Shown piece after piece: positions 22,701 through 59,100 of a stretch of 64,000 nucleotides of DNA (positions are counted from its first letter, which is position 1; each line of letters opens with the position of its first letter). The notes beneath the pieces were generated by a model, which had not been told where the DNA came from, did no database searches, and saw only the letters and a list, made by a program, of their open reading frames with translations. Position numbers and translations under genes: made by a program. Location: contig DF237237.1 of assembly GCA_000708835.1 (NCBI GenBank), positions 1 to 64,000 on the forward strand, read 5' to 3'. Source of the DNA: Klebsormidium nitens. Lineage: Eukaryota > Plantae > Klebsormidiophyceae.

Positions 22701-24553
22701 GCAGACCCCATCGATCTCTGCCCATTCATCACGTCCACTTTTTCCGTTTCTCTTTCTCACTTCAGAAGCCGGCCATGTGCGCTCATTCAGGGCAGCCCAT
22801 GCGGTGGTTTAATACACCTTGGCGGATTGGATCCTCTTAAGTGTAGCTTTTATTCTTCTGGGGGGCTCCAGAAAGAGAAGCACCTTGGTTGACAGCCGTA
22901 TCTTTGCTGCTAATTCGGTTGAGCATTCGGCTCTGTATCTCTTCGGTAATGCCCAGTGGTGTGCCCCATTCGTGAGCGTTGGAGTTTGGAATAACGGATC
23001 GGCAGGGTGAGACTGATAGAGAATTCGGTTGGGCGCCTGGTTTTCCGGGCCTGCCNNNNNNNNNNNNNNNNNNNNNNNNNNNNNNNNNNNNNNNNNNNNN
23101 NNNNNNNNNNNNNNNNNNNNNNNNNNNNNNNNNNNNNNNNNNNNNNNNNNNNNNNNNNNNNNNNNNNNNNNNNNNNNNNNNNNNNNNNNNNNNNNNNNNN
23201 NNNNNNNNNNNNNNNNNNNNNNNNNNNNNNNNNNNNNNNNNNNNNNNNNNNNNNNNNNNNNNNNNNNNNNNNNNNNNNNNNNNNNNNNNNNNNNNNNNNN
23301 NNNNNNNNNNNNNNNNNNNNNNNNNNNNNNNNNNNNNNNNNNNNNNNNNNNNNNNNNNNNNNNNNNNNNNNNNNNNNNNNNNNNNNNNNNNNNNNNNNNN
23401 NNNNNNNNNNNNNNNNNNNNNNNNNNNNNNNNNNNNNNNNNNNNNNNNNNNNNNNNNNNNNNNNNNNNNNNNNNNNNNNNNNNNNNNNNNNNNNNNNNNN
23501 NNNNNNNNNNNNNNNNNNNNNNNNNNNNNNNNNNNNNNNNNNNNNNNNNNNNNNNNNNNNNNNNNNNNNNNNNNNNNNNNNNNNNNNNNNNNNNNNNNNN
23601 NNNNNNNNNNNNNNNNNNNNNNNNNNNNNNNNNNNNNNNNNNNNNNNNNNNNNNNNNNNNNNNNNNNNNNNNNNNNNNNNNNNNNNNNNNNNNNNNNNNN
23701 NNNNNNNNNNNNNNNNNNNNNNNNNNNNNNNNNNNNNNNNNNNNNNNNNNNNNNNNNNNNNNNNNNNNNNNNNNNNNNNNNNNNNNNNNNNNNNNNNNNN
23801 NNNNNNNNNNNNNNNNNNNNNNNNNNNNNNNNNNNNNNNNNNNNGGGATCCAAGCAGTCGAATCCCAAGTCTACTGCTAACGGAAGCCGCGCAAGTTGTT
23901 GGCTGCGGTCTACCCTTATTCTCACGTGCTTTTACTACGGTCCAGCTTCAAGCGGTTGCAACGAAAGCTGGGTGGTGTGCGTCAAGATTTTGTTCGTTGC
24001 CTGGACTCTGTACATCATTGCTTGCGCAGGAACGGTCGGACCTGTATCTGTCTAGTGGTCGTGCATATTCTCAAGCAGAAGCGTTGGGGCCGGACTCTAC
24101 GCCGTCGTCAGAATGATCGAGATAATGATTGCCGGAGTTGAGTTAGAAAACAGAATTCATCCCGGCTCCTCTACAGGAGCCCTACTTGCAGGTTGGTTGT
24201 AACTGCGAAACTCTGCAGACATGTTCTGGCCCCTTACCGCTTCCTGTCCTTGATGTGAGGTTGACAAGAGCGTTTGCCGTGGTGCAGTTCCTCTCTCTGT
24301 GGCGGCCTTCACCCTGCCGCTGCCGCTGCTGGGCACCCCGTGCGCCCTGCCCCCCAGCTTTGTGAGTGGCACCTTCATCCTGTTGGCCGGCCTCATCATG
24401 TACGTGCTCTCGGGGAAGCAACAGCCCACGCAGGTGCCCCGCCCCACGCTCTCCCTCCAGCCCCACTTCGAGCGTGCAGTGGCCACGTCCACTCGCCAAG
24501 GCCTCACTCCCCGCGTGCGGGTTCTCTCAAAAAGGTGGGCTCACGGCCCCTAG
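19729..24553 (+). CDS. CLT: CRT-like (chloroquine-resistance-transporter-like) plastid thiol transporter
   Basis: Long Ser/Arg/Ala-rich N-terminal extension (transit-peptide-like), then LAVLNKILFKMA..PFVLANICTFG, PKTKFVCIGALEAAG, GYVPGTILPILSQ, WQLVLSAIFLRRRYSLGQLVG, VKERLFQEA..LDLFVVNLLGSAFQ, GAPLLPLVYITTNLAFNV and VPLSVAAFTLPLPLLG. One intron contains the N-gap 23056-23844. Confidence 0.92.
23056..23844. other. Assembly gap (N run)
   Basis: Run of N; smaller gaps at 27663-27682, 49030-49049 and 56152-56261. Confidence 1.
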
Positions 24554-27134: not shown

Positions 27135-28407
27135 GCTGGTTCTCGTGCTCAGGACCCAAACTCTTCAACACACTGCCCTAAAGCTTAGCTAGAGGCAGCG
27201 CTGGGGGGACATGGGGCGTCCTCAACTCCTGGACCATCTGATTCTCAGACTCTGCTGTTGACGATTTGCCATGCAGGCCAAGTTCAAGCCTTCAAGGTTT
27301 CGGGGTCTAGCCAGGCATTCCCTCCTGAACCGGCTGCATCCAGCCGCGGCCGGGCCAGGCCCGCGGCTGGAACGGACGCCGCGGGGCGGCGCGCTGCGGG
27401 GGGCCGCGCAAGCATTTGGCAAATTCTTGAATTGCAGGCCAGCCACCCACTAATATGTGCGTCAAATTGGGAAGGGCCTAGCCGCACACATTGTGGCTTA
27501 TGGCAGAATAGTCTGCACGGTTCTCTGTCACGATGCCCCTTTCGATGGGGCTCAAAGTTTCCATGTCCCGGGAACGAAGTCAGCCAGTTGCAGCCAGCTT
27601 GGTTCTTAACTTATACGCGGCTCAAACACATATACCGTACTACCGTACTACCAAGGTATGATNNNNNNNNNNNNNNNNNNNNTATAGAGAGGCCACGTCT
27701 CCCAGGCCCAGGGCCGGCCTGATTCTCATCAATGGCATGCAATCATGGTCCTTGCCAATGCCAATCCGCAGCCAATGGTAGTCCTGGCTGGTCCGTAGAA
27801 CCATTGCAGGCGACAGACTGCCCATGATCGCAAGGCTTCATCCGCAATCTGGTGCTGCACTCGGGTGCATGGTCAGTAGGCAGTCGTCTTGCCTTGGGAC
27901 AAGTTGACTTTAGATGACAGTGGCCGCCAAAGGACCGACTGGGGGGTGGAGTGCAGAGGTACAGCGCGTGACAGATTACCACGCAGTGGGTTTAAAGATC
28001 TTATCTAACAAGTAGAGAGCGGAGAGGTGAGCGCTAGCATTTAGGAATTTTGACCCGTTTGTAGACACCCAAGCACCGTAAGAGTCAAGCTGAACAAAGT
28101 TTTGTGATTGGGTTCCATATGTCACGTTAGACAGTGACCGTCGTGAGAGCAGACCAGCTAGGAAGGTTGATCAAGACTTGAACATGGGCAATGCATCTTA
28201 TGTGGCAGCTCATGCGACCGGGGCAGGCCAGCATTGCAGCAGGCAGTGCACCCACTCCCTGACTTGCTGGTGCACCTCATCGGCGACATCAGCGGTGTAG
28301 TCCCAGCCCCTGTGACTCCGAAGCTAGCGTCGGTGTTGGCGAGCTGCCAGGCTGCAGTGTCCCCCCCTGGGCTGCGCGCTGATAGTGTGCCTGGATGCAT
28401 TCTGCAG

Positions 28408-39988: not shown

Positions 39989-42900
39989 TCAGTCGAGCGG
40001 GTTGAAGTGGTGCATGTGCTTCTGCCCCAGCACGGCGGCCTGGTTCTCGTCGGCGCCGTCCCAGTCGTGGATGCCCGGCACCGTCACGAGACCCTGCTTC
40101 AGCTGGCCCAGGTACCGCGAGAACAGCACCTGCGCCACGCCCACCAGCAACGGTCACCCGCCGGCTACAACACCGTCGCCAGCCAGGTGCACAGCCGGGG
40201 GAACCGGGGCCAGTGGGGTTTACCGGCGATGGGAGGCGGCCGCTAGCCCGTTACGGGTGCTACCACATTCCATCTCGCCTCAGGGCCTGCCTCTGCTATG
40301 CCCTGCTCTTGTAAACTGCTGGTGCAACACAAACCTGGAATCCTCTTCTCTTTCCATATCAAATTCTTCAGACGGGCCGATTGAAAGGCCTGCGTAACTA
40401 TCGTCTATTGACACAGGTTTCTACACAGGGTTTTGAAGATTCTCTCTAAGCAGAAACCGTGGCGCGAGGTCGGGCGGGGCGCTGACCTCCTGCGTGGTGA
40501 CCGGGATGCGCGCCTTCTGGAAGCGGTCGAGCGCCGCGTCCAGGTCGCGCGCGGTGCCGCCTGCCGCGAGGTGCTCCTTGAGGCAGCGCGCGAGCGTGTG
40601 CGCGTCGATGATGCTCATGTTGGTGGCGCGCAGCCCGTGGGGCGTCACCTGCCAACGTGTCGCCCCCCCGCGACCACGCGTCAGCGTCCGCACAGCTTCG
40701 AGGGGGTGCTCAAAGCGTTGGGAACACAGCAGGCAGAATCAAAGTTGAAATGGATATTTGACGTTTTCCCCGCGGGGCTCAGGCCGGGAGCGTGGACGCG
40801 AGCGCGAGCGCGGCTGTGGGTTTGCCGGGCGGGCGGGCGGGCTCACCGGGTGAGCGGCCTCGCCGACGAGGACGACGCGGTCGAAGACCCAGCGGGAGAT
40901 GGGGTCGCGGTCGAAGATGGCGTTGATGAACGGCCGCGCCGTCGCCTTGGCAGAGGGGCGGGGGCAGACAAAAGCCGAAGAGGCGTCAGCCGTCGGGAAG
41001 AGCGAGGGTCAGGCAGCAGTTTCATATTATTAACCAGGCTTGTGTCAGGTTCGAGTGTCTCCAGAATGCAGGTCAGGATCAACCTCGAACTAAGGCGGTG
41101 CCGGGTGGCAATACATTCATTCAAGCACACTTCGGCAGCCGAGTTGTGGTGCTGCGTGGTTGACCTGCATGAGCGCGGCCATGGGCGGGGTCCACGTGCG
41201 CGCGGCGTCCTCGCGCATGCGCTCCACTTGGGCCGCGTCCGGCTGCACCGTCAGCGAGTGCGGCGACAGGGGCGGCTCCGCCTGGTTCACGTACCTGCAG
41301 GCAACAATCGCGGACGTTCAGGCAACACAAAGCGGCACCCGACGCCGTAAGGCTTCGGCGTGGATCAGTCGGGGGCGACGCTGAGACGTTGTCCTCCCTT
41401 TCCGATGCATGACTTGAAAGTTGCAGAGCGGAAAAACGCGCTACCATGCCCTTGGACCTTCCTGGCAACCCCACGGTCACTCGCCAACTGGAGACACAGT
41501 GTTTGGGGCACTACAACTGCGTTCACTCCTCAAACAGCCAGAAACTCCTCGTGCACTGACATCATCGGAGGCATTTGACAACACGGACTGATTCTGCGGA
41601 GGCTGGGGTTGGCCGGGTCTCGCTGCGCACCAGAGCCAGTTGATGCGGGTGCCTGGCAGCATGTAGAGCACGCTGTGCGTGTGGTGCGCCAGGTCGAAGT
41701 AGAGCGCGCGGCCCAGCGCCGGGTACTCGTGCTGCAGGTGACGCGCCACCGCCGCCGCCCCGCTGCATCCAGGGCACGCACGCACGGACGCACCGTCACA
41801 ACCCTCTCACGAGAGCCAGCACGCCGCATGGCGCTGAACAGCGAACGGCAAAGAGGCCGAATCGTCTATAATACTGGGCTACTCCTTTGAGCATAGAAAG
41901 GCACAGTCTGCTTTGGCACGGGGGAAACTTGTATTCCCAGCCGTTTCTGAATGAAAAGAAGCTCGAGCCTCGATGCACACCTGTGCTTGCTTTCTCCAAG
42001 CTGGGCATCGTCTTCCGTCGCCTGTTTGCTCTCCTCATCCGCGGCCATCACGCCGCGCCACGCCACATAGCCCGCATACCTGCACACTTCCATCGGCCCG
42101 CTCAATCCGTCTGCCCGCAAATGCGTTTCGGTAAACCCGACCGTCCCCATGCCCTTTGCGCACAAGTAGACAGTCTAAAAACGCCAAACTCACAGGCAGA
42201 ATTGATCGTTTGCCTGCCCGGAGACCGACCCCTGGCTCGCCTGGAGGGTGTCTGCACCGATGCCTGCCCCTCGTCCCCTACGCCCCCTGTTCCCCTCACC
42301 TTCTCTTGTCCCCCACCAGTTTCTCGCGCGTGCTGGACATGTTGCCGTCCGCCGCCACCATGAGGTCGCCCTCCAGCGGCTCTGCGCGCTCCGCCACGTG
42401 CACGCGCACCCTGCGCCCACCGTCGATGCTCTCGAAGGCGGTCATCGTGTGGCCCAGCAGGAGCACGCCCTCGGGCAGCGCGCCGCGCAGCAGCTGGTGC
42501 AGCAGAGCCCAGTGGCAGCTGCACCGCACACCACCAACCCGCCACGTGCTCACGACCTCGGGCCAAGCAAGACGGGCGACATCACTTGCGAAGCAGAGAA
42601 TTCACAGAGACATTGGGCAACTGAGGCAACCAGCAGTTGAATGCACCTCGAGGAAAAGCCTTTTCAGGGAGTACGCTCGCCATGTGCCACTCCTCGTGCG
42701 CAGCGCGCGTACCTGCGGTGGTCGTAGTGGTCATCTCGGTAGATCTCCCGCGCCGTCTTGGTCTTGCTGTTGACCGCGCGGTTGATCTCTGCGTCCAGCG
42801 GCAGGCTGGCCTCCTGCAGCCCCGCTGCGAGGCCCCAGTCCGCCAGCGCGGCGCACGTCTCGCGGTCCAGCCCCAGCCCCGCGCCCCCCTCGGTGATGTG

Positions 42901-43068
42901 GTGCGCGCGCTCCAGGACGGTTATCTTGCAGCCGGGCAGCGCGTGCAGCAGGCCGTGCGCCACTGCCAGGCCGCAGATGCTGCCGCCCACCACCACCACC
43001 GCCAGCGGCCGCGCCCCACCGCCATCAGTGGAGCCAGCAGAGCCAGCAGAAACGGGGCACGACGCCAT
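39989..43068 (-). CDS. FAD-dependent aromatic monooxygenase (2,6-dihydroxypyridine / 6-hydroxynicotinate hydroxylase-like)
   Basis: VVVGGSICG (Rossmann motif), DLMVAADG, YAGYVAWRG, RINWLW, RVVLVGEAAHP|VTPHGLRATNMSIIDA and VLFSRYLGQLKQG. Confidence 0.92.
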
Positions 43069-44682
43069 CGAAAATCGAGAGACACACAAGAGACACACAG
43101 GGCTTCAACCAGTAAATGTTCCTAACAAGAATTTGCTAGACTGAGCAAACCGATCAAGGTCACAGTTGCTACCAGCAGCTTCCAAAGTAATTGCTCATGT
43201 GCCGAAAGTTGCGGACATTTCTTCCTGCGTCTTGCTCCGTGGGCCGTGCTCCCGTAGGACTAGCTGGGCGGAAAAGGACAGCATCAAAACCGTACCGTGC
43301 ATGTAACGTATCGCCAACACTCGGTCAATTGTGTTTTCAGGAGCGCTTGCTGACAGTGGTTCTGAATGATCGCACGTTCAGTCCCTGCTTCAGAAGGTTT
43401 GTTGCGTCAGATTGTGGCGAATACTTTCACCAGTTACTGTTGTTCTTGCATGTGGACTGCAGGTTGCATTTGCAAGAGAACCTTTTTGATCAGATGTCCA
43501 GCTAACTACATCGGCCATCGATCAGGACCTTCATCCTCGTATTCGTAAAGGATACGTGCTGCAGGTTGGTCTTTTGCGGTGTCTCTTTCCTTTGGCAGGA
43601 CTCAGGAGGCCGCCTCTGGCACTCGGGAGTCTGCACTCACCAGCCTTGGCCGAGTTTGATCTCGATCAGCTGCAGCGCCGCCGCTCAGAGGAGGAAGCCG
43701 GTCGGCATTGGGCAACCCTTCGTACCCTGCATGTGCACTGCACTGCATGCAACCGCGTGCATGCATATAAGACGATGCGTCGGCTTCAATTATTGCATGA
43801 GGAGTAACTCTATGCTTGTCGGCGCAGATTGTGACAGTGTGCCGTACTCCCAACGGCGGCCCGTACATAAAATGCATGAAATCTAGCACTGACTAGGCCC
43901 TACCTAGGTAGGTAGTATGGTCCGAGGGCCGCGGAGGCCTTGCCGCTGCGCAGGCTCGCAGCTGCAGCCCAGAGGAACGGTTCCGGCTGATATGGCGCCA
44001 TGATCTGCATGAGCTTGCAAATTGCATGAATTCCATAGGAGTGCCTGTGCAGGCTGGCAGCTTCAACTTGTACCATATATTGAACAGCCTGCAGCATCGG
44101 AAAGATTCATAAAAGTATATGCAGAACATGATATTCCGGTTCCGGTTATTCAGGTATATAGACAACTGAGATTTGACGACAAGCCCGCGGTTGGCGGCGC
44201 CGTACGTTACATTGCATGAGCTGCCGCCTGCACGAGCACTTCGAAGCCTTCGTGCATACTGTGCAGCGGGGGACTTGTGCAAGGACTTCGAAGTTGATCA
44301 GAGGACTCCGGTCAAGCTTGAACCTTTAGTGCATGTTTTAGTCAAAGTCGAGAACCACCATACAGGCCAAATATGTTAAGCTCTTCTGAGTGATGTAGAA
44401 GCATCAAAGACGGTGGGTTCAGGCACCCTGCACTCATAAACCATCGGGCTCTTGCATGGTTGTGCGCTCATTTGCATTCAGCAGCTCAACAAGCATTCGG
44501 AAGCAAGTGCGTGTTCGGTAAATGTATGTCATGAAGGTTGCAGGTTCGAGGCCGGAAGAGTCGAGGCTAGTATGTTGGAGCAGTCAAGCGGCTCACGACT
44601 GTTCCAGGTGTCAAATGTACGGGTGCGCAGAAACAATATAACTCTCGTACGCAACAATGCGTCGACCTGCTGGCCTGACCTG

Positions 44683-46619
44683 TCAGTTGAACTTGTGCTG
44701 CGCGTGGTTCTGTGTACCCCCCCTGTCGAGCCCGGCCGGCTGGATCCCGCTGTCTAAGCTGGCTGTCGCCGCTGCCGATCCTCCGTTGGACCCCGCTTCA
44801 CCTGCATGCGTACCTGGGCTGTGCGTACTCATTCTTCCCCTCTCGTCTAACTCTGCGGATGCGTGTGCTGCCGTCACCTCGTTTGGTACCTGTGCGCTGA
44901 CTGCCTCCGGCCCTGTCGGCTTGCTGTCCCCCCGGTCGCTCTTGATCCCTCTCTTGGCCCGGTTCGTCTCCCCGGCCTCCTCGATGCACTGCCACACCCG
45001 CCACGCCAGCCGGTCTGCAGCCAACTCGCGCCGCTCCGCAGTCATCGCCAGGACCTGCCGCCACAAGCAGGGCCCCAGCGTGAATGAACCAAGGGAAAGA
45101 AGAGACTTTGCACCTTGACGCAAACATCCAATCGAAAAGGGCCGTGAGTGATTGGTGCTCCCGGTATGTGGAATTTTATGTCCAGTTGTCAGAAGGCTCC
45201 AGAACGAGAATCTCCTTCAACAGGGAGGGTGTGGCTGTCAGCCAAGCACGTCAGTTCAGGAGGACTAATCCAAATGTGTAAGATGACAGGAAACATTCAG
45301 ACCGAGTGCCCCGGGAATCGCGACCTGGCCCGAGCACCTGCGGACAGTCCCTTTCATCGAGAGCCCGGGGCCGGCCTCACCTCGTCGGAGTTGAAGCCTT
45401 CGATGATGACCCCCCCCCTGCGCGGCACCGCCAGCTCCTTCCAGTCGGAGGGGTACCACCCGAACTCCTTAGCCAACTCCTGCACACCCACGCAGACAAC
45501 CCGCTTACCCACACGCCCTTCTGCTGTCAAACAGGTCGCTCCGACCAGGCGGCAGACAGGTGAATCAACGAATCAGAAACTGAGGCCTCGAACCTCTTCG
45601 ACTGATCGTTTGCATAGTCTTCAGTGTGAGGAAATCTTAGGGTCCGCTGGCGCACCTTTTGCAGGGCGTCGTAGATGCAAGCATCACGAACGTGCTTCTT
45701 CAGATGGCGACGGGGTGAAAATGATAGCCCAGAGAAGGCAGCACGCTTGAACGCCGAATGCATATGGGGGTAGGGTAGGATTCCGTACGAGCTCGAACCA
45801 AGCAAAATGCTGCGTCCTGCGCTTCGCTGATCTGCCGTCAGGCGCTATGCGTCACCTTGTTGAGGGGCGCGCGCGCATCTCCAATGACGCCCCAGACGGC
45901 CCCTTCCGTGTGCGCCTCGGGCCCCTGCCCGTGAATCTCGACGACGGGCACCCCGCGCAGCGTGCGCGCGCTCACCCAGTTGATGTACTCCTCCCACATC
46001 AAGTGCGGCGCGTCGCGGTCAGGCCGCAGCACGCGCCACCCCGTGCGGCCCAGCCGAGCTGCCACCTTCTCTGCCACCTGAAAACAATGTGGGGAATGAC
46101 GGCCACAGCGAGGGGCAAAACGGCAAAGTATTATGGCTCCTGGCAAAGTTCGAAGATCCCAACCGGGTTCTGGCAGGGCATGCCAAGTGCACTTGGTAAC
46201 CCTGCGCTCGACGGGAACAGGATTACCTTTTGATCGAGCACCAACCCTTCGTACAGTCTACCGTTTACGAAAGGCGAAGGTTTGGACATGTCAGCATTGC
46301 GCAATGTTTGCTTACGAGATTGCATCCAGACCCACTTCTGCGACCTGCGCCAACGTAATGGTAAAGCTCCTGAATACTTTATGGAACTCCAGGAGCTACG
46401 TTCTCGTGACAAATGCGCTCGCGCTGTCCCCGCTTTCAGTCCTTAGTGCAGCCATCCAGTTACGCTCACCGTCTTGTTGAAGTCGCGCTCTCCGGGCGCC
46501 CCCGTATCCCCCTCAGGGTCAATGAAGTGCCCCGGCACCACCACGATCTCGTCCCGGCTGCCGATGCGCCGCTGCGCCTCCAGGTACCGCCAGGTCGGAG
46601 CAGGGCTGGTGCGCGCCTC
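44683..46619 (-). CDS. N-acetylmuramoyl-L-alanine amidase (Amidase_3-like) domain, 4 exons
   Basis: IVVVPGHFIDPEGDTGAPGERDFNKT|VAEKVAARLGRTGWRVLRP..VVEIHGQG..|ELAKEFG..GGVIIEGFNSDE|VLAMTAERRELAADRLAWRVWQCI. The His, Glu and His zinc ligands and the catalytic Glu of Amidase_3 all appear present, and all joins are phase 0. There is no ATG in the first exon, so it must splice from upstream. Confidence 0.78.
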
Positions 46620-46786
46620 CTGAAAGCGAGGGTGGAAGTGGCGATCAGGGGGGATGCAAACGAGATTGCGCACGAGGGTCGCACTGCCAGCGAGGATTGA
46701 CAAGTAGCAAGGATGCTAGTTGAAGGCATAGGCCCTGGTATACACTTGGTGCTCCCCGCATGTTGGCATATTTTCTTGCCCTCACC

Positions 46787-48946
46787 CGCTTCCCAATGAA
46801 TTTGGTCAGCTTCATTGAGTCCACCCGTGGTTTTCGTTGCTGCATGCCGCCATCTTTTGAGAAATGCAGTGGCACTTCGGCATGAGCCCGTAGTGACTGC
46901 AAAAGAGAAGGAGCATCGATCAAACTATGTATAGAACCATTTGAGTATGTCCCGCAATATGAAGTCAGGACTTTCTCCTCGACTTCCTTCTCGACTTCCT
47001 CCGACTTTAGGACACAAGCAAAGTGCGAGAGAGCAGATTCAATGGCTACATACAGGGTTGTCTTTGCTGGACAAGAGTGACAAGCCAGGAGCAAGATGAC
47101 TCACTGCTGTGGAGTCCCAAGGGAGTTCTACCGTTCCTCGGTACTCAACCCGCGGTCTTTCATGTTGCCCCTGTGGCTGTACTCTGACCTGTCCGAGAAC
47201 AAACTCTCAAGCTCACAGGTCGGTTTTGCCACCACAGCTTCTAGAAATATCGTCAGATAGGTATTGTCTGCAGTTTTCAGTAAACAGCTTGGAAAACGAC
47301 CTTACAACACATCAACGCAGCTGACTCCTCTGCAAAAGCACCATACTGAACTTTCAAGGCCTAAAGAAAGGGCACCAAGCAAGAGGGCCCAGAGCGACAA
47401 AGGCAGGCACCTCACCAGACTTCTGTGCTTCCAGCCCAGCTGGAGACCAGCGTGGGGGAAACAACAGGGGCCCTTGTCGCCTCGCTGCAAGGTCGCAACT
47501 CTAGAATGTTACCCAAAAACGCTATGAGCGACGCTGTATCTGCCAAGCAAGCAAACTTCACATGAGCGCAGGGCGCACAGAGTGGGTGTTAAGATGCATC
47601 TGGGGGCGTTCGTGGGCAGGGCCCCACCTGGAGGGTGAGCCCCAGAGTGAGGTACGAGTGGGCTGCAATGCGGACGTCTCGCTGGATGGTCACCTTTGAC
47701 TCCGGCAGGATCTCGATAGTGGGCCGCAGGCCTGCACAGACCACAGGTTGGCAGCTCGACACGTGGGGCAACCATGACAGGGTCAACGCCATTGATGCTG
47801 TCTGCTAATCACACACACTTGTCGCCTCGCAAGCTTCAAAACGTAACGCTGCTTTCTGGATCAGCAATTCTTATCACAACAAGCTTGGACTTCCATGGCT
47901 TCCAAGCAAGATTGGCCGATGCTGGACCACTTTGCAATGCACCATATTGACTTCCCACTCCCCTCACCAAGCGAACCACCCAATGGGCTCAGTATCTTGA
48001 CCTTGGCGGCTGGAGTCACCCACGAGATGGTTGGGACTGATTTCGATGGGGGGTGCCTGGGCCGTGAGCCCATGTGTGGCAGCGCTGCAGCCCCCTTGAG
48101 CCCCACCAGAAATGAGACGGGGATGAACGGCCAGCGCCAGTGAGCATCATCGCCTGCAATTTCCACAGCACCCGTCGATGTTTGCTGGAGTGTACAGCTA
48201 AAGACGCTGGCGTGCAGGAGCGGAGCAAGTTGGGATGCAAGAGGCTGCGCAGGACGGCCACGGGCAGCAAACTAAGGACAAGAGCGGTTCATGCGGGCGC
48301 TTATAAACCACAACTGGCTTCAAAGCCCAAAGACAACAAAGCGATGTACGCCGCAGAAGCTATCTGACTCACTTAAGCCTAGGACATGAGGAAGCGCCAA
48401 TGCTTTGTAGGCTTTGAATTGCAGCTCCCGGCGGTCACAACCCTCAATGCTCTGCGCCTTGAGGCCTACTTTCCATCTAAAGTCCTGCGGTTCAAGACAT
48501 CGGGTGGCCCGGGGAGGAGTCAGCAATGAGGGTTCCCCGAAAACCAGCCCAACAGGTTGATGCAACTGCCCAAGCTCCAGGCTGGCCGTTTGAAACTTGA
48601 CACATGCAAATGCTCGTTTCAGAGCGGCTGCGACATCAGAACGGGATTTTTGTTGCTTGCTTGCACACATACACGGCACTCGGAAATGCTGCCTCACCAT
48701 GCCGGGGACCTTGTGGCGCAGGGGCAGGCGGTACACCTTGATGGGGGGGTGCGCAGGCTGGCCGGCCTCCATCTCTTGCGGGGCTGCCTGCCTCTCGGGG
48801 CTGTCAAAGCAGCGCGGCGCAATGCAGTACCCCTCCCAAGGGAAAGCACCCTCCCCCCCATTGTCGGAGTCCGTGCTCTCAGCCTCATCAACTGTTGCCT
48901 GCAACCAGCGAGGAAGATGCCAGAGCTGCCTCCAAAGAGACATCAT
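46787..48946 (-). CDS. Beta-strand-rich exons of unknown family, probable N-terminal part of the amidase gene
   Basis: Open exons with GT-AG ends: IKVYRLPLRHKVPGM|DFRWKVGLKAQ..LQFKAYKAL, GLRPTIEILPESKVTIQRDVRIAAHSYLTLGLTLQ|LGWKHRSL|SLRAHAEVPLHF..KFIGKR. One internal join (48030-47730) is unresolved. Confidence 0.5.
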
Positions 48947-49501
48947 TTCTGAATTGGCATTTTTTCCTGTTGAATGCGAATTCTTTTTCACGGGCGCGGA
49001 CGCCCTATCCTACCTTATGTCGTGTACCGNNNNNNNNNNNNNNNNNNNNCTACCATACCTTAAGAGTTTAAGAGTTTAAGCTGATTCCTGACTTTGCCTG
49101 TCAGTGTGATACCTAGTGTGTTAGGCGCGCGGCCGCCCGACGGCAGCGGCCGCCCCGGGCCCGGCACATGCCGCGGCGCGGCGCGCGAACTCTACGCGTG
49201 GAGTCTGGACTGTGAGGTCTCAGGTGTCCGAGGACTCGACTCTCGAGTCTCGGACCAACCGGGGACCGCCGCGCCAGAATGTGCGGCATCATGAAGTTCG
49301 AATGTTCGACCGTCTGCGCCGCGTCAGGATTGCGAGAGGCTGGAGCGGGCCTCCGCGACGCTTCGCCTTCCTACATTATGCACTCCGAGTCCTGGAGAAC
49401 TACTACCTACCTAGTACCTTCTACGGTACCTATCATACCGTACCCTGTAGGCAGTGGGCACCATTTGCCTACCGTACTTCATAGCAAACCCACGTACCGT
49501 A

Positions 49502-56100: not shown

Positions 56101-59100
56101 TCTGTCCCCCTCCCCTTCTCTGCCAGCCAGCCCTTCACCGTCCTCTTCGTCNNNNNNNNNNNNNNNNNNNNNNNNNNNNNNNNNNNNNNNNNNNNNNNNN
56201 NNNNNNNNNNNNNNNNNNNNNNNNNNNNNNNNNNNNNNNNNNNNNNNNNNNNNNNNNNNNNAGCCAGCCCTTCACCGTCCTCTTCGTATCTTCCCCCTTC
56301 CCCTTCCGCCTCGCCCTCCGCTGCTTCCGCTTCGAGCTCGCCAACGCCCTCCTCGTCCCCCTCCTCCTCCCCCTCTCTCTCTCCCTCGGCTGTTCCGCCA
56401 GCCAGCGCTTCGCCATCCTCTTCGTCTCTTCCCCCTTCCCCTTCCGCCTCCTCCTCCCCCTCTGTTTCCCCTTCTAGCTCGCCAGCACCCTCCTCCTCTC
56501 CCTCTCTTTCTCCCTCGCCTTTTCCGCCGGCCAGCGCTTCGCCATCGTCTTCCCCCGTTCCCGCTTCCCCTTCCGCCTCCTCGTCGCCTGCTGCTTCCCC
56601 TTCTAGCTCCCCCGTTCCCTCCTCCTCTCCTTCTCCCTCTCTTTCTCCTTCACCTTCTCTGCCGGCTAGCGCTTCTCCCTCAACTTCGGCCGTCCCCCCC
56701 TCGCCGTCGGCTTCAATCCCACCTTCCACTTCGCCGGCATCATCCCCATCCCCTTCGCCGCCTAGCATTCCTCCCTCAGCTTCTCCTTCTCCTTCGCAAT
56801 CCCCCACAGCCTCTTCACTCCCTTCTGCTAGCCCGTCCCCTTCTAGCTCTCCCGCTTCGTCTCCTTCGCCCTCCCCTTCAAATCTCCCCGCTTCAGCCAG
56901 CCCGTCCCCGTCAGCATCCTCTGTTCCCCCTTCTCCGTCCGCAAGCCCTCTGGCCTCGCCTTTCCATTTGTCGTCACCCTCCCCCTTTCCTTCACCTTCC
57001 TCCTCCACCATTACCGCCCCATCACCGTCGCAGAGCACCTCACCGCCTTCTCCCAGCCCTTCTCCTTCTTCATCATCCAGCCCCGCTCCTTCGCCGCAGC
57101 CCACCCCTTCCAGCTCTCCTTCTCCCTCTCCTCCCCTCCCCCTCGGCCTCTCCGTCTCCTTCCTCCGTTGCCCCTCCCCAACCCCCCCACTGCCCTCCCC
57201 TTCCCCCGCCCCATCCCCACTGGCTGTCTCTCCTGCCGCTGCTCCCACAGGGACGGACGGCTACAAGTACTTGCCCACTGGGCCCGGCTTCACGGCCGCC
57301 GTGGCGGGCCAGACGGCCACCTTCCAGCTCAGCGCGCGCGACCTGTATGGCAACGCCGCCCCGCTGGGCGCTCTTAATCTGACGGCCTATTTTGTGCCCA
57401 ACAACACTGTGGCCTTCAATATGAACGTCACGTCATCCACCGTCACCGTGACGTACAAGATCAACGTAGCTGGCTCGTATAGTTTCCGGCTGCTGAGGAA
57501 CGGAGGCAGCATTTACAACGGCACTCTCAACGGGCTCACCGTCAATCCTGGTAAGCGATGGCACCGTCAAAGACGCAGGTGGTTCCAACATATAAGATAA
57601 ATTGGTACGACGGTTCTGGCAGAACGATGTCGAAACAATCAACAATCAAATGCTTCAATTTATGTATCTTTAAAGTTCATCACTGTCTGCACAAATGGAA
57701 CGCCGAAAGCTTCTCTTTTTATGTATCACTTGTCTTGCAGTGAACTGAAGGAGAGTTTGTTTTTGTCTGCGCAGCTGCGGCTTACGTGACCAAGTTCAGC
57801 GTTGCTGGCGCTGGGCTCAACACGACGATGGCGGGCACCGCGACGAGCTTCCAGATCCAGGCGCGCGACGTGTACGGCAACCTGGCGGCCGCGGACCAGA
57901 CGCTGCTGGCGGCCCGCCTCGTGTCGAGCGCGGCAGCCGTGGTGCCGACCGTAACGGTGGTGGCCGGCTCTGTGGGGCTCTACAGCGCGGCGCTGACGGC
58001 CACCGTGGCGGGGCAGTACAACCTGTCCGTCACCTACAACGGAACGCTCATTGCCGGAGCCACGAGCCCGCTGCTCAAAACAGTACTGCCCAGTAAGCCC
58101 ACAGCAATCGGAAATGGTCTCCGATTGTTCTGCATCAAGTCGAGGGAAAAACAAGCGTGTAGCATCTGCAGTTGACAGCTCCGCAGGGAAGAATTGAAAG
58201 ACCACTTCACCGATGAAGGGATCTGAAGTGCCGTCTCGTATGAAAATCTGACATTCTCGACTTCTTCTGCTGCTAGGCACGGTATCCGCCCGGCAATGCT
58301 TTGCATATGGGGCGGGCATTAGCGGGGGCCTAGCCGGCGCGAACCTGTCGTTCACGGTGCAAGCCGCGGACCAGTACGGCAACGCCATCACGAGCGGCAC
58401 GTATCTGTTCTCGGCGGCCATCAGCCCCGCCGTCAGCAGCAGCCTCACGCTGACGGCCTCCGCGGCCGGGGTGGCGACGGGCAGCTACAGCATCTCGCAG
58501 GCCGGCACCTACACGCTCACGCTCGCGCTCAACGGGACCACCATCAACGGCGGACAGGCATACAGCATTGGCATCGGACCATGTGAGCAGACGGCGCTCG
58601 ATCAGAGGGCATCACCCGATTCTGAATGCAACCACTCAAAGTCTTCCTGTCGGAGAACTTCTGCAAGAAGACGAACTGGGCGACTCCCGCCTTATTCATC
58701 AAGTCGATTCGCGTGAGTGTTTGAATCTGAAATACAAGGCATCGGCTTAAATAGAGAGAACGTTTTGAACGGTCAATTTCAAAAGGGAGCTTCTCGGATT
58801 GTTTGTATGGTCAAACTTGTGCGACCTCCCAACAGAGCTGGCAGCTTGCAAACCAAAAGCCTGCCGCTCGCTTGAGGTACCAAGACTCATCCGGATATTC
58901 GTGCCTTTCGTTTCAGCTGCTGTGAGCCCCGCCCAGACGACTGTGAGCGGCGCGGGGCTGGCCAGCTCGGTGGCTGGCGTGGCGGGCGTGGTGGTGATCC
59001 AGGTGCGCGACCAGTACGGCAACACGCTGCAGGGCGAGCAGGCGCAGCTGTCGGTTGTGCTGCGCAGCCTCGCGGGCGGCAGCAACCTGACGGCTACGGT

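What the first reader, a model, noticed from the sequence alone, without database searches (positions are those of the whole stretch)
44683..46619. Nuclear, intron-containing peptidoglycan amidase (Amidase_3) in a green-lineage genome
Seen: four in-phase exons with all expected active-site residues (PGH, GERDFN, EIH, IIEG) and the closing helix. Established: Amidase_3 enzymes (AmiA/B/C, CwlC type) are Zn-dependent bacterial and phage wall hydrolases that split septal peptidoglycan. Mosses and some streptophyte algae retain chloroplast peptidoglycan needed for plastid division, and to my knowledge an amidase has not been a characterised part of that plant toolkit. The EIH variant resembles cyanobacterial/phage-type members. 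The inference is either a plastid-division hydrolase or a horizontally acquired antibacterial enzyme.
Basis: partly seen in the sequence, partly recalled or inferred. Interest (0 to 1): 0.72.

Follow-up and report, generated by a model that had tools for sequence, protein, structure and literature searches.

The report
Barrel-anchored plastid-wall amidase candidate
A streptophyte alga expresses a spliced nuclear gene that joins a predicted membrane beta-barrel to a divergent bacterial-type peptidoglycan amidase. The same unstudied protein was found only in green lineages, most of them reported to keep a peptidoglycan wall around their chloroplasts, so it is a testable candidate for the enzyme that cuts that wall.

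Summary
Spliced RNA contigs from four studies confirm them. They are only the last 4 of 11 exons. The full CDS runs 48946-44683 and encodes 585 aa.

The C-terminal half does not reach Pfam's Amidase_3 threshold: no exon matches, and 27 of 46 relatives match below threshold. It does fold as Amidase_3 (AF2 pLDDT 86.5; Z 12.5-14.7 to 23 solved peptidoglycan amidases, next fold 9.1). A true Amidase_3 phage protein bridges it by profile comparison (92%, E 5e-7). H336, E349, H404 and E456 are essentially invariant.

The N-terminal half has no Pfam family. It is predicted as an all-beta barrel whose best matches are 12-stranded membrane barrels, including chloroplast OEP21. There is no transit or signal peptide.

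Named relatives come only from streptophyte algae, bryophytes, lycophytes, ferns, Ginkgo and a few prasinophytes. None is from angiosperms or core chlorophytes. The tree follows the species tree, so recent horizontal transfer is unlikely.

Best reading, partly inferred: an outer-envelope-anchored amidase acting on plastid peptidoglycan.

The parts
44683..48946 (-). Whole coding region: 11 exons, 585 aa plus stop
   Evidence: Clean ORF with all junctions GT-AG. Aligns almost end to end with Spirogloea P0079 (E 7e-106), Closterium and Marchantia P0083.
48698..48946 (-). Exon 1: start codon (MMSLWRQ...), acidic N-terminus, CxxxRCF motif
   Evidence: Junction inferred from homology and a GTGAGG donor. 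Start and exon end are conserved in L001-L003. Not confirmed by RNA.
48373..48484 (-). Exon 2 (DFRWKV...LPHVLGL)
   Evidence: Homology plus GT-AG. Not confirmed by RNA.
47968..48153 (-). Exon 3 (DDAHWRWPFIPVSF..., the most conserved motif of the N-domain, with invariant W-x-W)
   Evidence: Not confirmed by RNA.
47628..47731 (-). Exon 4 (LRPTIEILPESKVTIQRD...)
   Evidence: Not confirmed by RNA.
47416..47484 (-). Exon 5
   Evidence: The 3' junction is shown by an RNA contig loose end at 47189 that continues at 47417. The 5' junction comes from homology and an AG acceptor downstream of an in-frame stop.
47105..47188 (-). Exon 6
   Evidence: RNA joint 46896|47105 and the loose end at 47189.
46786..46896 (-). 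Exon 7 (linker between the two domains)
   Evidence: RNA joints 46619|46786 and 46896|47105.
46470..46619 (-).
   Evidence: RNA joints. H is found in 45 of 46 and E in 46 of 46 relatives. Aligned to GH and GER of a true Amidase_3.
45856..46077 (-). Exon 9: RPDRD, then VEIHGQG with H404 (45933-45931)
   Evidence: RNA joints. H is found in 46 of 46 relatives. Aligned to the ELH of a true Amidase_3.
45381..45479 (-). Exon 10: GGVIIEGFNSDE with E456 (45401-45399), the presumed catalytic Glu
   Evidence: RNA joints. E is found in 46 of 46 relatives. It sits in the fifth strand of the model, as in Amidase_3.
44683..45054 (-). Exon 11: closing helix (conserved), variable disordered tail, stop codon
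   Evidence: RNA joint 45054|45381. The tail is poorly conserved in orthologues.
44513..44682 (-). 3' untranslated region
   Evidence: RNA contigs end at 44513-44593.
47105..48835 (-). Region encoding the N-terminal all-beta domain (about aa 38-268), introns included
   Evidence: AF2 model of the Marchantia orthologue (pLDDT 75, 11-13 long strands). Best structural matches are membrane beta-barrels. Protein-language-model feature search of the ESM Atlas: OEP24-like 0.91.
44935..46559 (-). Region encoding the Amidase_3-fold domain (about aa 326-502), introns included
   Evidence: AF2 pLDDT 86.5. Foldseek and VIA-align matches.

Best explanation
The gene encodes a zinc-dependent N-acetylmuramoyl-L-alanine amidase of a divergent Amidase_3 branch. 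It most likely acts on the peptidoglycan layer that this alga and its relatives keep between the two chloroplast envelope membranes. Shown: the gene is spliced and expressed. Its C-terminal domain has the Amidase_3 fold with an essentially invariant His-Glu-His set and a Glu at the catalytic position. The family occurs only in green lineages, most of them reported to retain plastid peptidoglycan, and was inherited vertically. Inferred: the N-terminal half is a roughly 12-stranded beta-barrel inserted in the plastid outer envelope. Such barrels are made without a cleavable transit peptide. If its ends lie as in OEP21, both termini face the intermembrane space. The C-terminal amidase would then hang in that space, where the wall lies. 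There it would strip stem peptides from glycan strands, to split the wall at plastid division or to turn it over, as AmiA/B/C do at the bacterial septum.
For: Expression and splicing.
Gene model.
Fold: AF2 pLDDT 86.5, pTM 0.83. The Foldseek top 32 are all peptidoglycan amidases. VIA-align gives Z 12.5-14.7, rmsd about 3 A over about 155 residues, for 23 Amidase_3 entries, then drops to 9.1 for PghP.
Sequence bridge: the phage protein L012:2989-3528 is a true Amidase_3 (45.4 bits against a cut-off of 27). It matches the family profile at 92%, E 5e-7, pairing GH, GER and E-x-H.
Residue conservation.
Distribution: Klebsormidium-grade window sequence, Chlorokybus, Mesostigma, Spirogloea, Mesotaenium, Netrium, Closterium, Marchantia, Riccia, Calypogeia, Sphagnum, Physcomitrium, Selaginella, Diphasiastrum, Psilotum, Adiantum, Ceratopteris, Ginkgo, Pycnococcus, Picocystis, Chloropicon. 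No named angiosperm or core chlorophyte.
These groups overlap those reported to hold the peptidoglycan toolkit: streptophyte algae, bryophytes and lycophytes (PMC13519894); Chloropicon primus (PMC10784329).
The tree follows the species tree.
Barrel.
OEP21 has 12 strands with both termini in the intermembrane space (PMC10279527).
The N-terminus is acidic and conserved, with no targeting peptide.
Against: No member reaches Pfam's Amidase_3 cut-off. A profile of the family finds no solved amidase by sequence.
No activity, metal binding or localisation has been measured.
The barrel model is of middling confidence (pLDDT 75, pTM 0.61). Its Z scores of 8-10 are only a little above what unrelated models reach (note).
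DSSP counts 11 clear long strands, so the side on which the amidase ends up is uncertain.
Amphipathic strands fit a soluble barrel as well.
Co-distribution with peptidoglycan was read from hit lists and papers, not from a proteome-by-proteome count. Some seed plants said to keep the full toolkit (Thuja, Asparagus, Citrus; PMC10784329) gave no hit.
Beta-barrels also sit in the mitochondrial outer membrane.
Confidence: 0.5

Rival explanations
1. An Amidase_3-fold hydrolase that works on another amide substrate, or in another place such as the cytosol. The N-terminal domain would be a soluble beta-barrel that binds a ligand or partner, not a membrane anchor.
For: There is no targeting peptide. 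The family is too divergent for Pfam. Related folds cut other amides: PghP Z 9.1, N-formylglutamate amidohydrolase Z 7-7.8. Soluble LolA-like barrels appear lower in the list at Z 6-6.6. The barrel model has middling confidence.
Against: The peptidoglycan amidases stand 3.4 to 5.6 Z units above the next fold. The top 24 matches of the N-domain are all membrane barrels. The distribution tracks lineages with plastid peptidoglycan.
Confidence: 0.25
2. A catalytically silent relative that binds plastid peptidoglycan or regulates another hydrolase such as DipM. It would act as a tether between the outer envelope and the wall.
For: Inactive hydrolase homologues that act as regulators are known in bacteria: NlpD activates the amidases without hydrolysing peptidoglycan (PMC4015805). 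A barrel-plus-wall-binding layout would suit a tether.
Against: His, Glu, His and Glu are kept in 45-46 of 46 relatives across lineages as far apart as prasinophytes and ferns. That is expected for an active site, not for a binding module.
Confidence: 0.1
3. A horizontally acquired antibacterial enzyme that the alga releases against bacteria.
For: Phage and bacterial lysins share the fold. The closest true Amidase_3 found by sequence is a phage protein. Earlier scan notes report other bacterial-type wall hydrolases in this genome.
Against: There is no signal peptide. The gene tree follows the species tree from prasinophytes to ferns. Ten introns have positions conserved in relatives. Motif scans found no close bacterial relative. 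It is fused to a barrel, not to a secretion or wall-binding module.
Confidence: 0.05
4. The barrel sits in the mitochondrial outer membrane, and the enzyme has a mitochondrial role.
For: Mitochondria also hold beta-barrels. Porin_3 appears among the feature matches (0.87). Tom40 and SAM barrels appear at Z 5-6.
Against: Mitochondria have no peptidoglycan. The family is absent from non-green eukaryotes in the searches. OEP21 (Z 9.1) and OEP24-like (0.91) score higher.
Confidence: 0.05
5. A REC114-like meiotic protein.
For: Exon 8 alone matches mouse REC114 weakly (PDB E 0.007, Pfam E 0.083).
Against: The match is 41 residues from a 50-residue query. No full-length relative shows REC114 in Pfam. 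The fold is Amidase_3.
Confidence: 0.01

Closest known systems
Bacterial and phage Amidase_3 peptidoglycan amidases (AmiA/B/C, AmiC2 of Nostoc, CwlV, CwlD, LytH, Rv3717/Ami1, CD27L, PlyPSA)
   Same: Same alpha/beta fold (Z 12.5-14.7). Same order of strands and helices, with His after strand 1, Glu at the start of helix 1, His at the end of strand 3 and Glu in strand 5.
   Different: About 15-18% identity, below Pfam's cut-off. Own motifs (PGHWIDPG, GAPGER, RPDRD, EIHGQG). No AMIN, SPOR, LysM or SH3 wall-targeting module. The stretch between strands 4 and 5 (model residues 135-166) leaves little room for the long regulatory helix of AmiA/B/C, judged from recalled knowledge of those enzymes. Eukaryotic, with ten introns, and fused to a beta-barrel.
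DipM (LytM/M23 peptidoglycan hydrolase needed for chloroplast division in Cyanophora and Physcomitrella; PMC4015805)
   Same: A host-encoded wall hydrolase proposed to split plastid peptidoglycan, with a similar restricted distribution.
   Different: A different fold and a different bond cut (peptidase versus amidase). That study searched photosynthetic eukaryotes for Ami homologues and reported only DipM homologues there.
Chloroplast outer-envelope beta-barrels OEP21 and OEP24
   Same: The N-domain's predicted barrel matches OEP21 (Z 9.1, 141 residues aligned) and OEP24-like clusters by protein-language-model features (0.91). It lacks a transit peptide, as these proteins do by general knowledge. 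OEP21's termini face the intermembrane space (PMC10279527).
   Different: No sequence similarity by Pfam. OEPs are stand-alone solute pores, whereas here the barrel carries an enzyme domain. Membrane insertion is untested.
Bacterial autotransporters and other 12-stranded outer-membrane barrels (NalP, EstA, AIDA-I, KdgM, OMPLA)
   Same: A roughly 12-stranded barrel joined to an enzyme or passenger domain (Z 7.8-9.6).
   Different: In autotransporters the barrel is C-terminal and the passenger is exported outward. Here the barrel is N-terminal, and the enzyme would stay on the periplasm-like side.

Membership tests
Pfam Amidase_3 (PF01520) | Profile match at or above the gathering score (27 bits) | tested here: not met
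   No match for any exon. 3 of 10 full-length relatives matched at E 0.03-0.09. 27 of 46 domain sequences matched at E <= 1, best 0.0013, all below 27 bits. The window's own spliced protein could not be handed to the scan by reference.
Amidase_3 superfamily (fold level) | Amidase_3 alpha/beta fold | tested here: met
   Model of the Marchantia orthologue, 56% or less identical to the window's domain: Foldseek top 32 all Amidase_3. VIA-align Z 12.5-14.7 for 23 entries, next fold 9.1. ESM Atlas TM 0.58-0.66 to Amidase_3 clusters.
Amidase_3 superfamily (fold level) | Homology by sequence through an intermediate | tested here: met
   L012:2989-3528 scores 45.4 bits on PF01520 over profile positions 1-173. 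It matches the family profile with hhalign at 92.3%, E 5.4e-7, over 77 columns. Direct comparison with E. coli AmiB alone, or with a 7-sequence amidase alignment, was weak (E 0.016 and 0.0017).
Amidase_3 superfamily (fold level) | Zinc ligands His-Glu-His plus catalytic Glu | tested here: met
   H336, E349, H404 and E456 of the window protein lie in columns with H 45/46, E 46/46, H 46/46 and E 46/46. The first three pair with GH, GER and ELH of the true Amidase_3. E456 is placed by its strand position only. The site geometry in the model could not be inspected.
Amidase_3 superfamily (fold level) | Hydrolysis of the MurNAc-L-Ala bond | not testable with these tools
   Needs an enzyme assay.
Transmembrane beta-barrel of an outer membrane or outer envelope | Closed barrel of about 12 long antiparallel strands | tested here: inconclusive
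   AF2 pLDDT 75, pTM 0.61, 11 long strands plus a short hairpin. VIA-align top 24 all membrane barrels, Z 7.3-10.2. ESM Atlas TM 0.40-0.55 to bacterial outer-membrane barrel families. The Foldseek PDB search gave no significant match.
Transmembrane beta-barrel of an outer membrane or outer envelope | Lipid-facing hydrophobic belt and membrane insertion | not testable with these tools
   Strands alternate hydrophobic and polar residues, which does not separate membrane barrels from soluble ones.
NT-type C2 domain (name given to the Pseudoscourfieldia relative) | Profile or fold match to a C2 domain | tested here: not met
   No NT-C2 or C2 family at E <= 1 in 27 N-domains. No C2 fold among the listed top 50 rows of either PDB structure search.
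REC114 | REC114 profile match over the domain, and its fold | tested here: not met
   Only a 41-residue sub-threshold match of one exon. Absent from full-length relatives.

The most novel reading that the evidence does not exclude
This is the missing amidase of the chloroplast peptidoglycan system. It would be an ancient, green-lineage-wide enzyme anchored by its own beta-barrel in the outer envelope, with the catalytic domain in the intermembrane space. It would be needed to split or remodel the plastid wall at division, and lost in lineages that lost the wall. It would also be the first plastid outer-envelope barrel known to carry an enzyme domain.
Probability: 0.35. Interest if true: 0.88.

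Novelty: new variant of a known kind. Interest (0 to 1): 0.74.

Why it matters
Peptidoglycan around chloroplasts is established in moss and inferred in many green lineages. Its synthesis genes are well charted. Its breakdown is known only through DipM, and no amidase has been tied to it.

Every member of this family that I looked up is labelled hypothetical, uncharacterised or unnamed, apart from one 'C2 NT-type domain' label and a few automatic labels on metagenome fragments. Members carry no Pfam domain, and the family is found in the tractable models Physcomitrium (XP_024400487.1) and Marchantia (Mp4g21500).

That makes three open questions directly testable: how the plastid wall is split at division, on which side of the outer envelope this happens, and why the wall was lost or kept in different lineages. 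It also gives a marker gene to set beside the Mur genes when scoring genomes for a plastid wall. Finally, it is a case where standard domain annotation misses an enzyme that fold prediction recovers.

Tried and rejected
- Pfam and NCBIfam scans of single exons found nothing useful.
- PDB sequence searches with exons gave only chance matches, REC114 and desulfoferrodoxin. The REC114 lead was dropped.
- An ESM Atlas feature search with one exon was uninformative.
- Two word-index protein searches with exon-bearing ORFs returned only ORF fragments of close algal orthologues.
- I first built a 300-aa model starting at MQQRK. I rejected it when relatives showed a conserved N-terminal half encoded upstream. 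The in-frame stop at about 47513 lies in an intron.
- A family profile against PDB sequences found no amidase.
- hhalign against E. coli AmiB alone, and against a local 7-sequence Amidase_3 alignment, was weak and misaligned beyond the first motif.
- A motif scan of 185,579 bacterial and archaeal genomes found no relative, so the donor lineage stays open.
- P0030, a 199-aa hit on long metagenome contigs, looked possibly bacterial. It lies beside a eukaryotic Las1 gene and is an exon fragment.
- The spliced window protein has no reference. It was therefore analysed only in scripts, and the Marchantia orthologue was folded in its place.

Full report
**Observation**

The gene lies on the minus strand.

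Contigs from four public runs, from four studies and under two organism labels, hold the spliced form. Their joints are at exactly these borders. Exon depths were about 10-fold above intron depths. The same contigs add two more exons (46896-46786, 47188-47105). They also carry a loose end that continues at 47417.

**Gene model**

My first model began at an internal Met and gave 300 aa. A HMMER search of 1.84 billion representatives with an exon-9 profile found 51 relatives. In the long ones the domain sits behind a conserved N-terminal region of about 250-300 aa.

That region is encoded upstream in the window. Reading the DNA gave five more exons with canonical sites and an ATG at 48946. The 11-exon CDS is a clean 585-codon ORF. 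It aligns nearly end to end with Spirogloea (E 7e-106), Closterium and Marchantia proteins.

Three orthologous metagenome loci (L001-L003) carry every exon with the same borders and the same start. The first four junctions rest on homology only. A 20-N assembly gap lies 84 nt upstream of the ATG.

**C-terminal domain**

No exon matches Pfam or NCBIfam. Full-length relatives match Amidase_3 only below threshold: 27 of 46, best E 0.0013. A family profile finds no solved amidase by sequence.

An AlphaFold2 model of the Marchantia domain, built with a 46-sequence alignment, is confident (pLDDT 86.5, pTM 0.83).
- Foldseek's top 32 PDB matches are all peptidoglycan amidases.
- VIA-align gives Z 12.5-14.7 (rmsd about 3 A, about 155 residues) for 23 Amidase_3 entries. 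The next folds are PghP (9.1) and N-formylglutamate amidohydrolase-like proteins (7-7.8).

A viral-contig protein found by motif scan (L012:2989-3528) is a true Amidase_3 (45.4 bits). It matches the family profile at 92%, E 5e-7, and pairs GH, GER and E-x-H.

In the window protein these residues are H336, E349 and H404. Together with E456 in strand 5, they are invariant or nearly so in 46 relatives. The enzyme therefore looks active. Pfam membership fails, while membership of the superfamily holds.

**N-terminal domain**

This domain has no Pfam family. The AlphaFold2 model (pLDDT 75, pTM 0.61) is all-beta with long strands. Foldseek finds nothing significant in the PDB.

An exhaustive VIA-align run puts membrane barrels in the top 24 places:
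- a designed 12-stranded barrel, Z 10.2
- KdgM, Z 9.6
- FapF, Z 9.1
- chloroplast OEP21, Z 9.1
- autotransporter barrels, OmpG and OMPLA

The ESM Atlas returns bacterial outer-membrane barrel families by shape. By protein-language-model features it returns OEP24-like (0.91) and Porin_3 (0.87) clusters. These scores are modest, so the barrel is a reasoned inference and not a result.

The N-terminus is short, acidic and conserved, unlike a transit or signal peptide. OEP21 has 12 strands with both termini in the intermembrane space (PMC10279527). If this protein lies the same way, the amidase faces the wall.

**Distribution and descent**

Named relatives come from these groups:
- streptophyte algae: Chlorokybus, Mesostigma, Spirogloea, Mesotaenium, Netrium, Closterium
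- bryophytes: Marchantia, Riccia, Calypogeia, Sphagnum, Physcomitrium
- lycophytes and ferns: Selaginella, Diphasiastrum, Psilotum, Adiantum, Ceratopteris
- a gymnosperm: Ginkgo
- prasinophyte-grade green algae: Pycnococcus/Pseudoscourfieldia, Picocystis, Chloropicon

No named hit is from an angiosperm or a core chlorophyte, although those proteomes are abundant in the databases. One unnamed hit examined in context sits on a eukaryotic contig.

The peptidoglycan toolkit is reported in streptophyte algae (including Klebsormidium and Closterium), bryophytes and lycophytes (PMC13519894), and in Chloropicon (PMC10784329).

In a maximum-likelihood tree the window sequence branches after Mesostigma plus Chlorokybus. 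It branches before Zygnematophyceae plus land plants (support 96/97). That is where Klebsormidium belongs. It agrees with earlier scan notes naming the genome Klebsormidium nitens, which I did not verify otherwise. Descent is vertical.

**Origin**

A motif scan of bacterial genomes found nothing. The ESM Atlas names the same 197-aa cyanobacterial amidase-like cluster by shape (TM 0.64/0.72) and by protein-language-model features (0.86). This is a lead toward an endosymbiotic origin and nothing more.

**Literature**

Eight searches found no paper on this family or its accessions (one search was run for OEP21). [quoted passage not shown]

**Verdict**

Its product is a divergent Amidase_3-fold enzyme joined to a probable membrane barrel, in an unstudied green-lineage family that follows plastid peptidoglycan. 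The plastid-wall amidase reading is the best supported at about 0.5. The envelope-anchor mechanism is inferred.

Noticed in passing
window 48945-48962 (minus strand): A five-codon upstream ORF (ATG CCA ATT CAG AAA TGA) ends in a stop that overlaps the main start codon (ATGATG). The transcript start is unknown, so it may or may not lie in the mRNA.
   Followed up: no
window 49030-49049; also 23056-23844, 27663-27682, 56152-56261: Runs of N (assembly gaps). The first lies 84 nt upstream of the predicted start codon of this gene.
   Followed up: partly
window 42664-43098 (minus strand): The downstream neighbour has a GxGxxG FAD-binding start (VVVVGGSICGLAVA). The same neighbour, with a weak FAD_binding_3 match, follows the orthologue in L004, so local gene order is conserved.
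   Followed up: no
window 46470-46619 (exon 8): This 50-residue exon resembles the REC114 N-terminal domain of mouse by chance (PDB 6hfg E 0.007). It shows how short exon queries can mislead.
   Followed up: yes
L012:2989-3531: A 180-aa phage Amidase_3 from an IMG/VR contig shares the GAxGER and ExH motifs with the green-lineage family. It bridges that family to Pfam Amidase_3. Its host is unknown.
   Followed up: partly
P0024, P0033, P0051 (marine metagenome proteins of 1100-1181 aa): Relatives from marine metagenomes carry the amidase domain at the end of proteins of about 1100 aa, with long, partly low-complexity N-terminal regions. P0033's cluster lies on contigs up to 290 kb. The organisms and the extra domains were not identified.
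   Followed up: no
P0083:64-90 and window exon 3 (48153-47968): The most conserved motif of the N-domain (LPxCLGLGDDARWRW, with W-x-W invariant) falls partly in a low-confidence loop of the barrel model (residues 67-70 below pLDDT 50), not in a modelled strand. It could be a plug, a missing twelfth strand or a partner-binding site.
   Followed up: no
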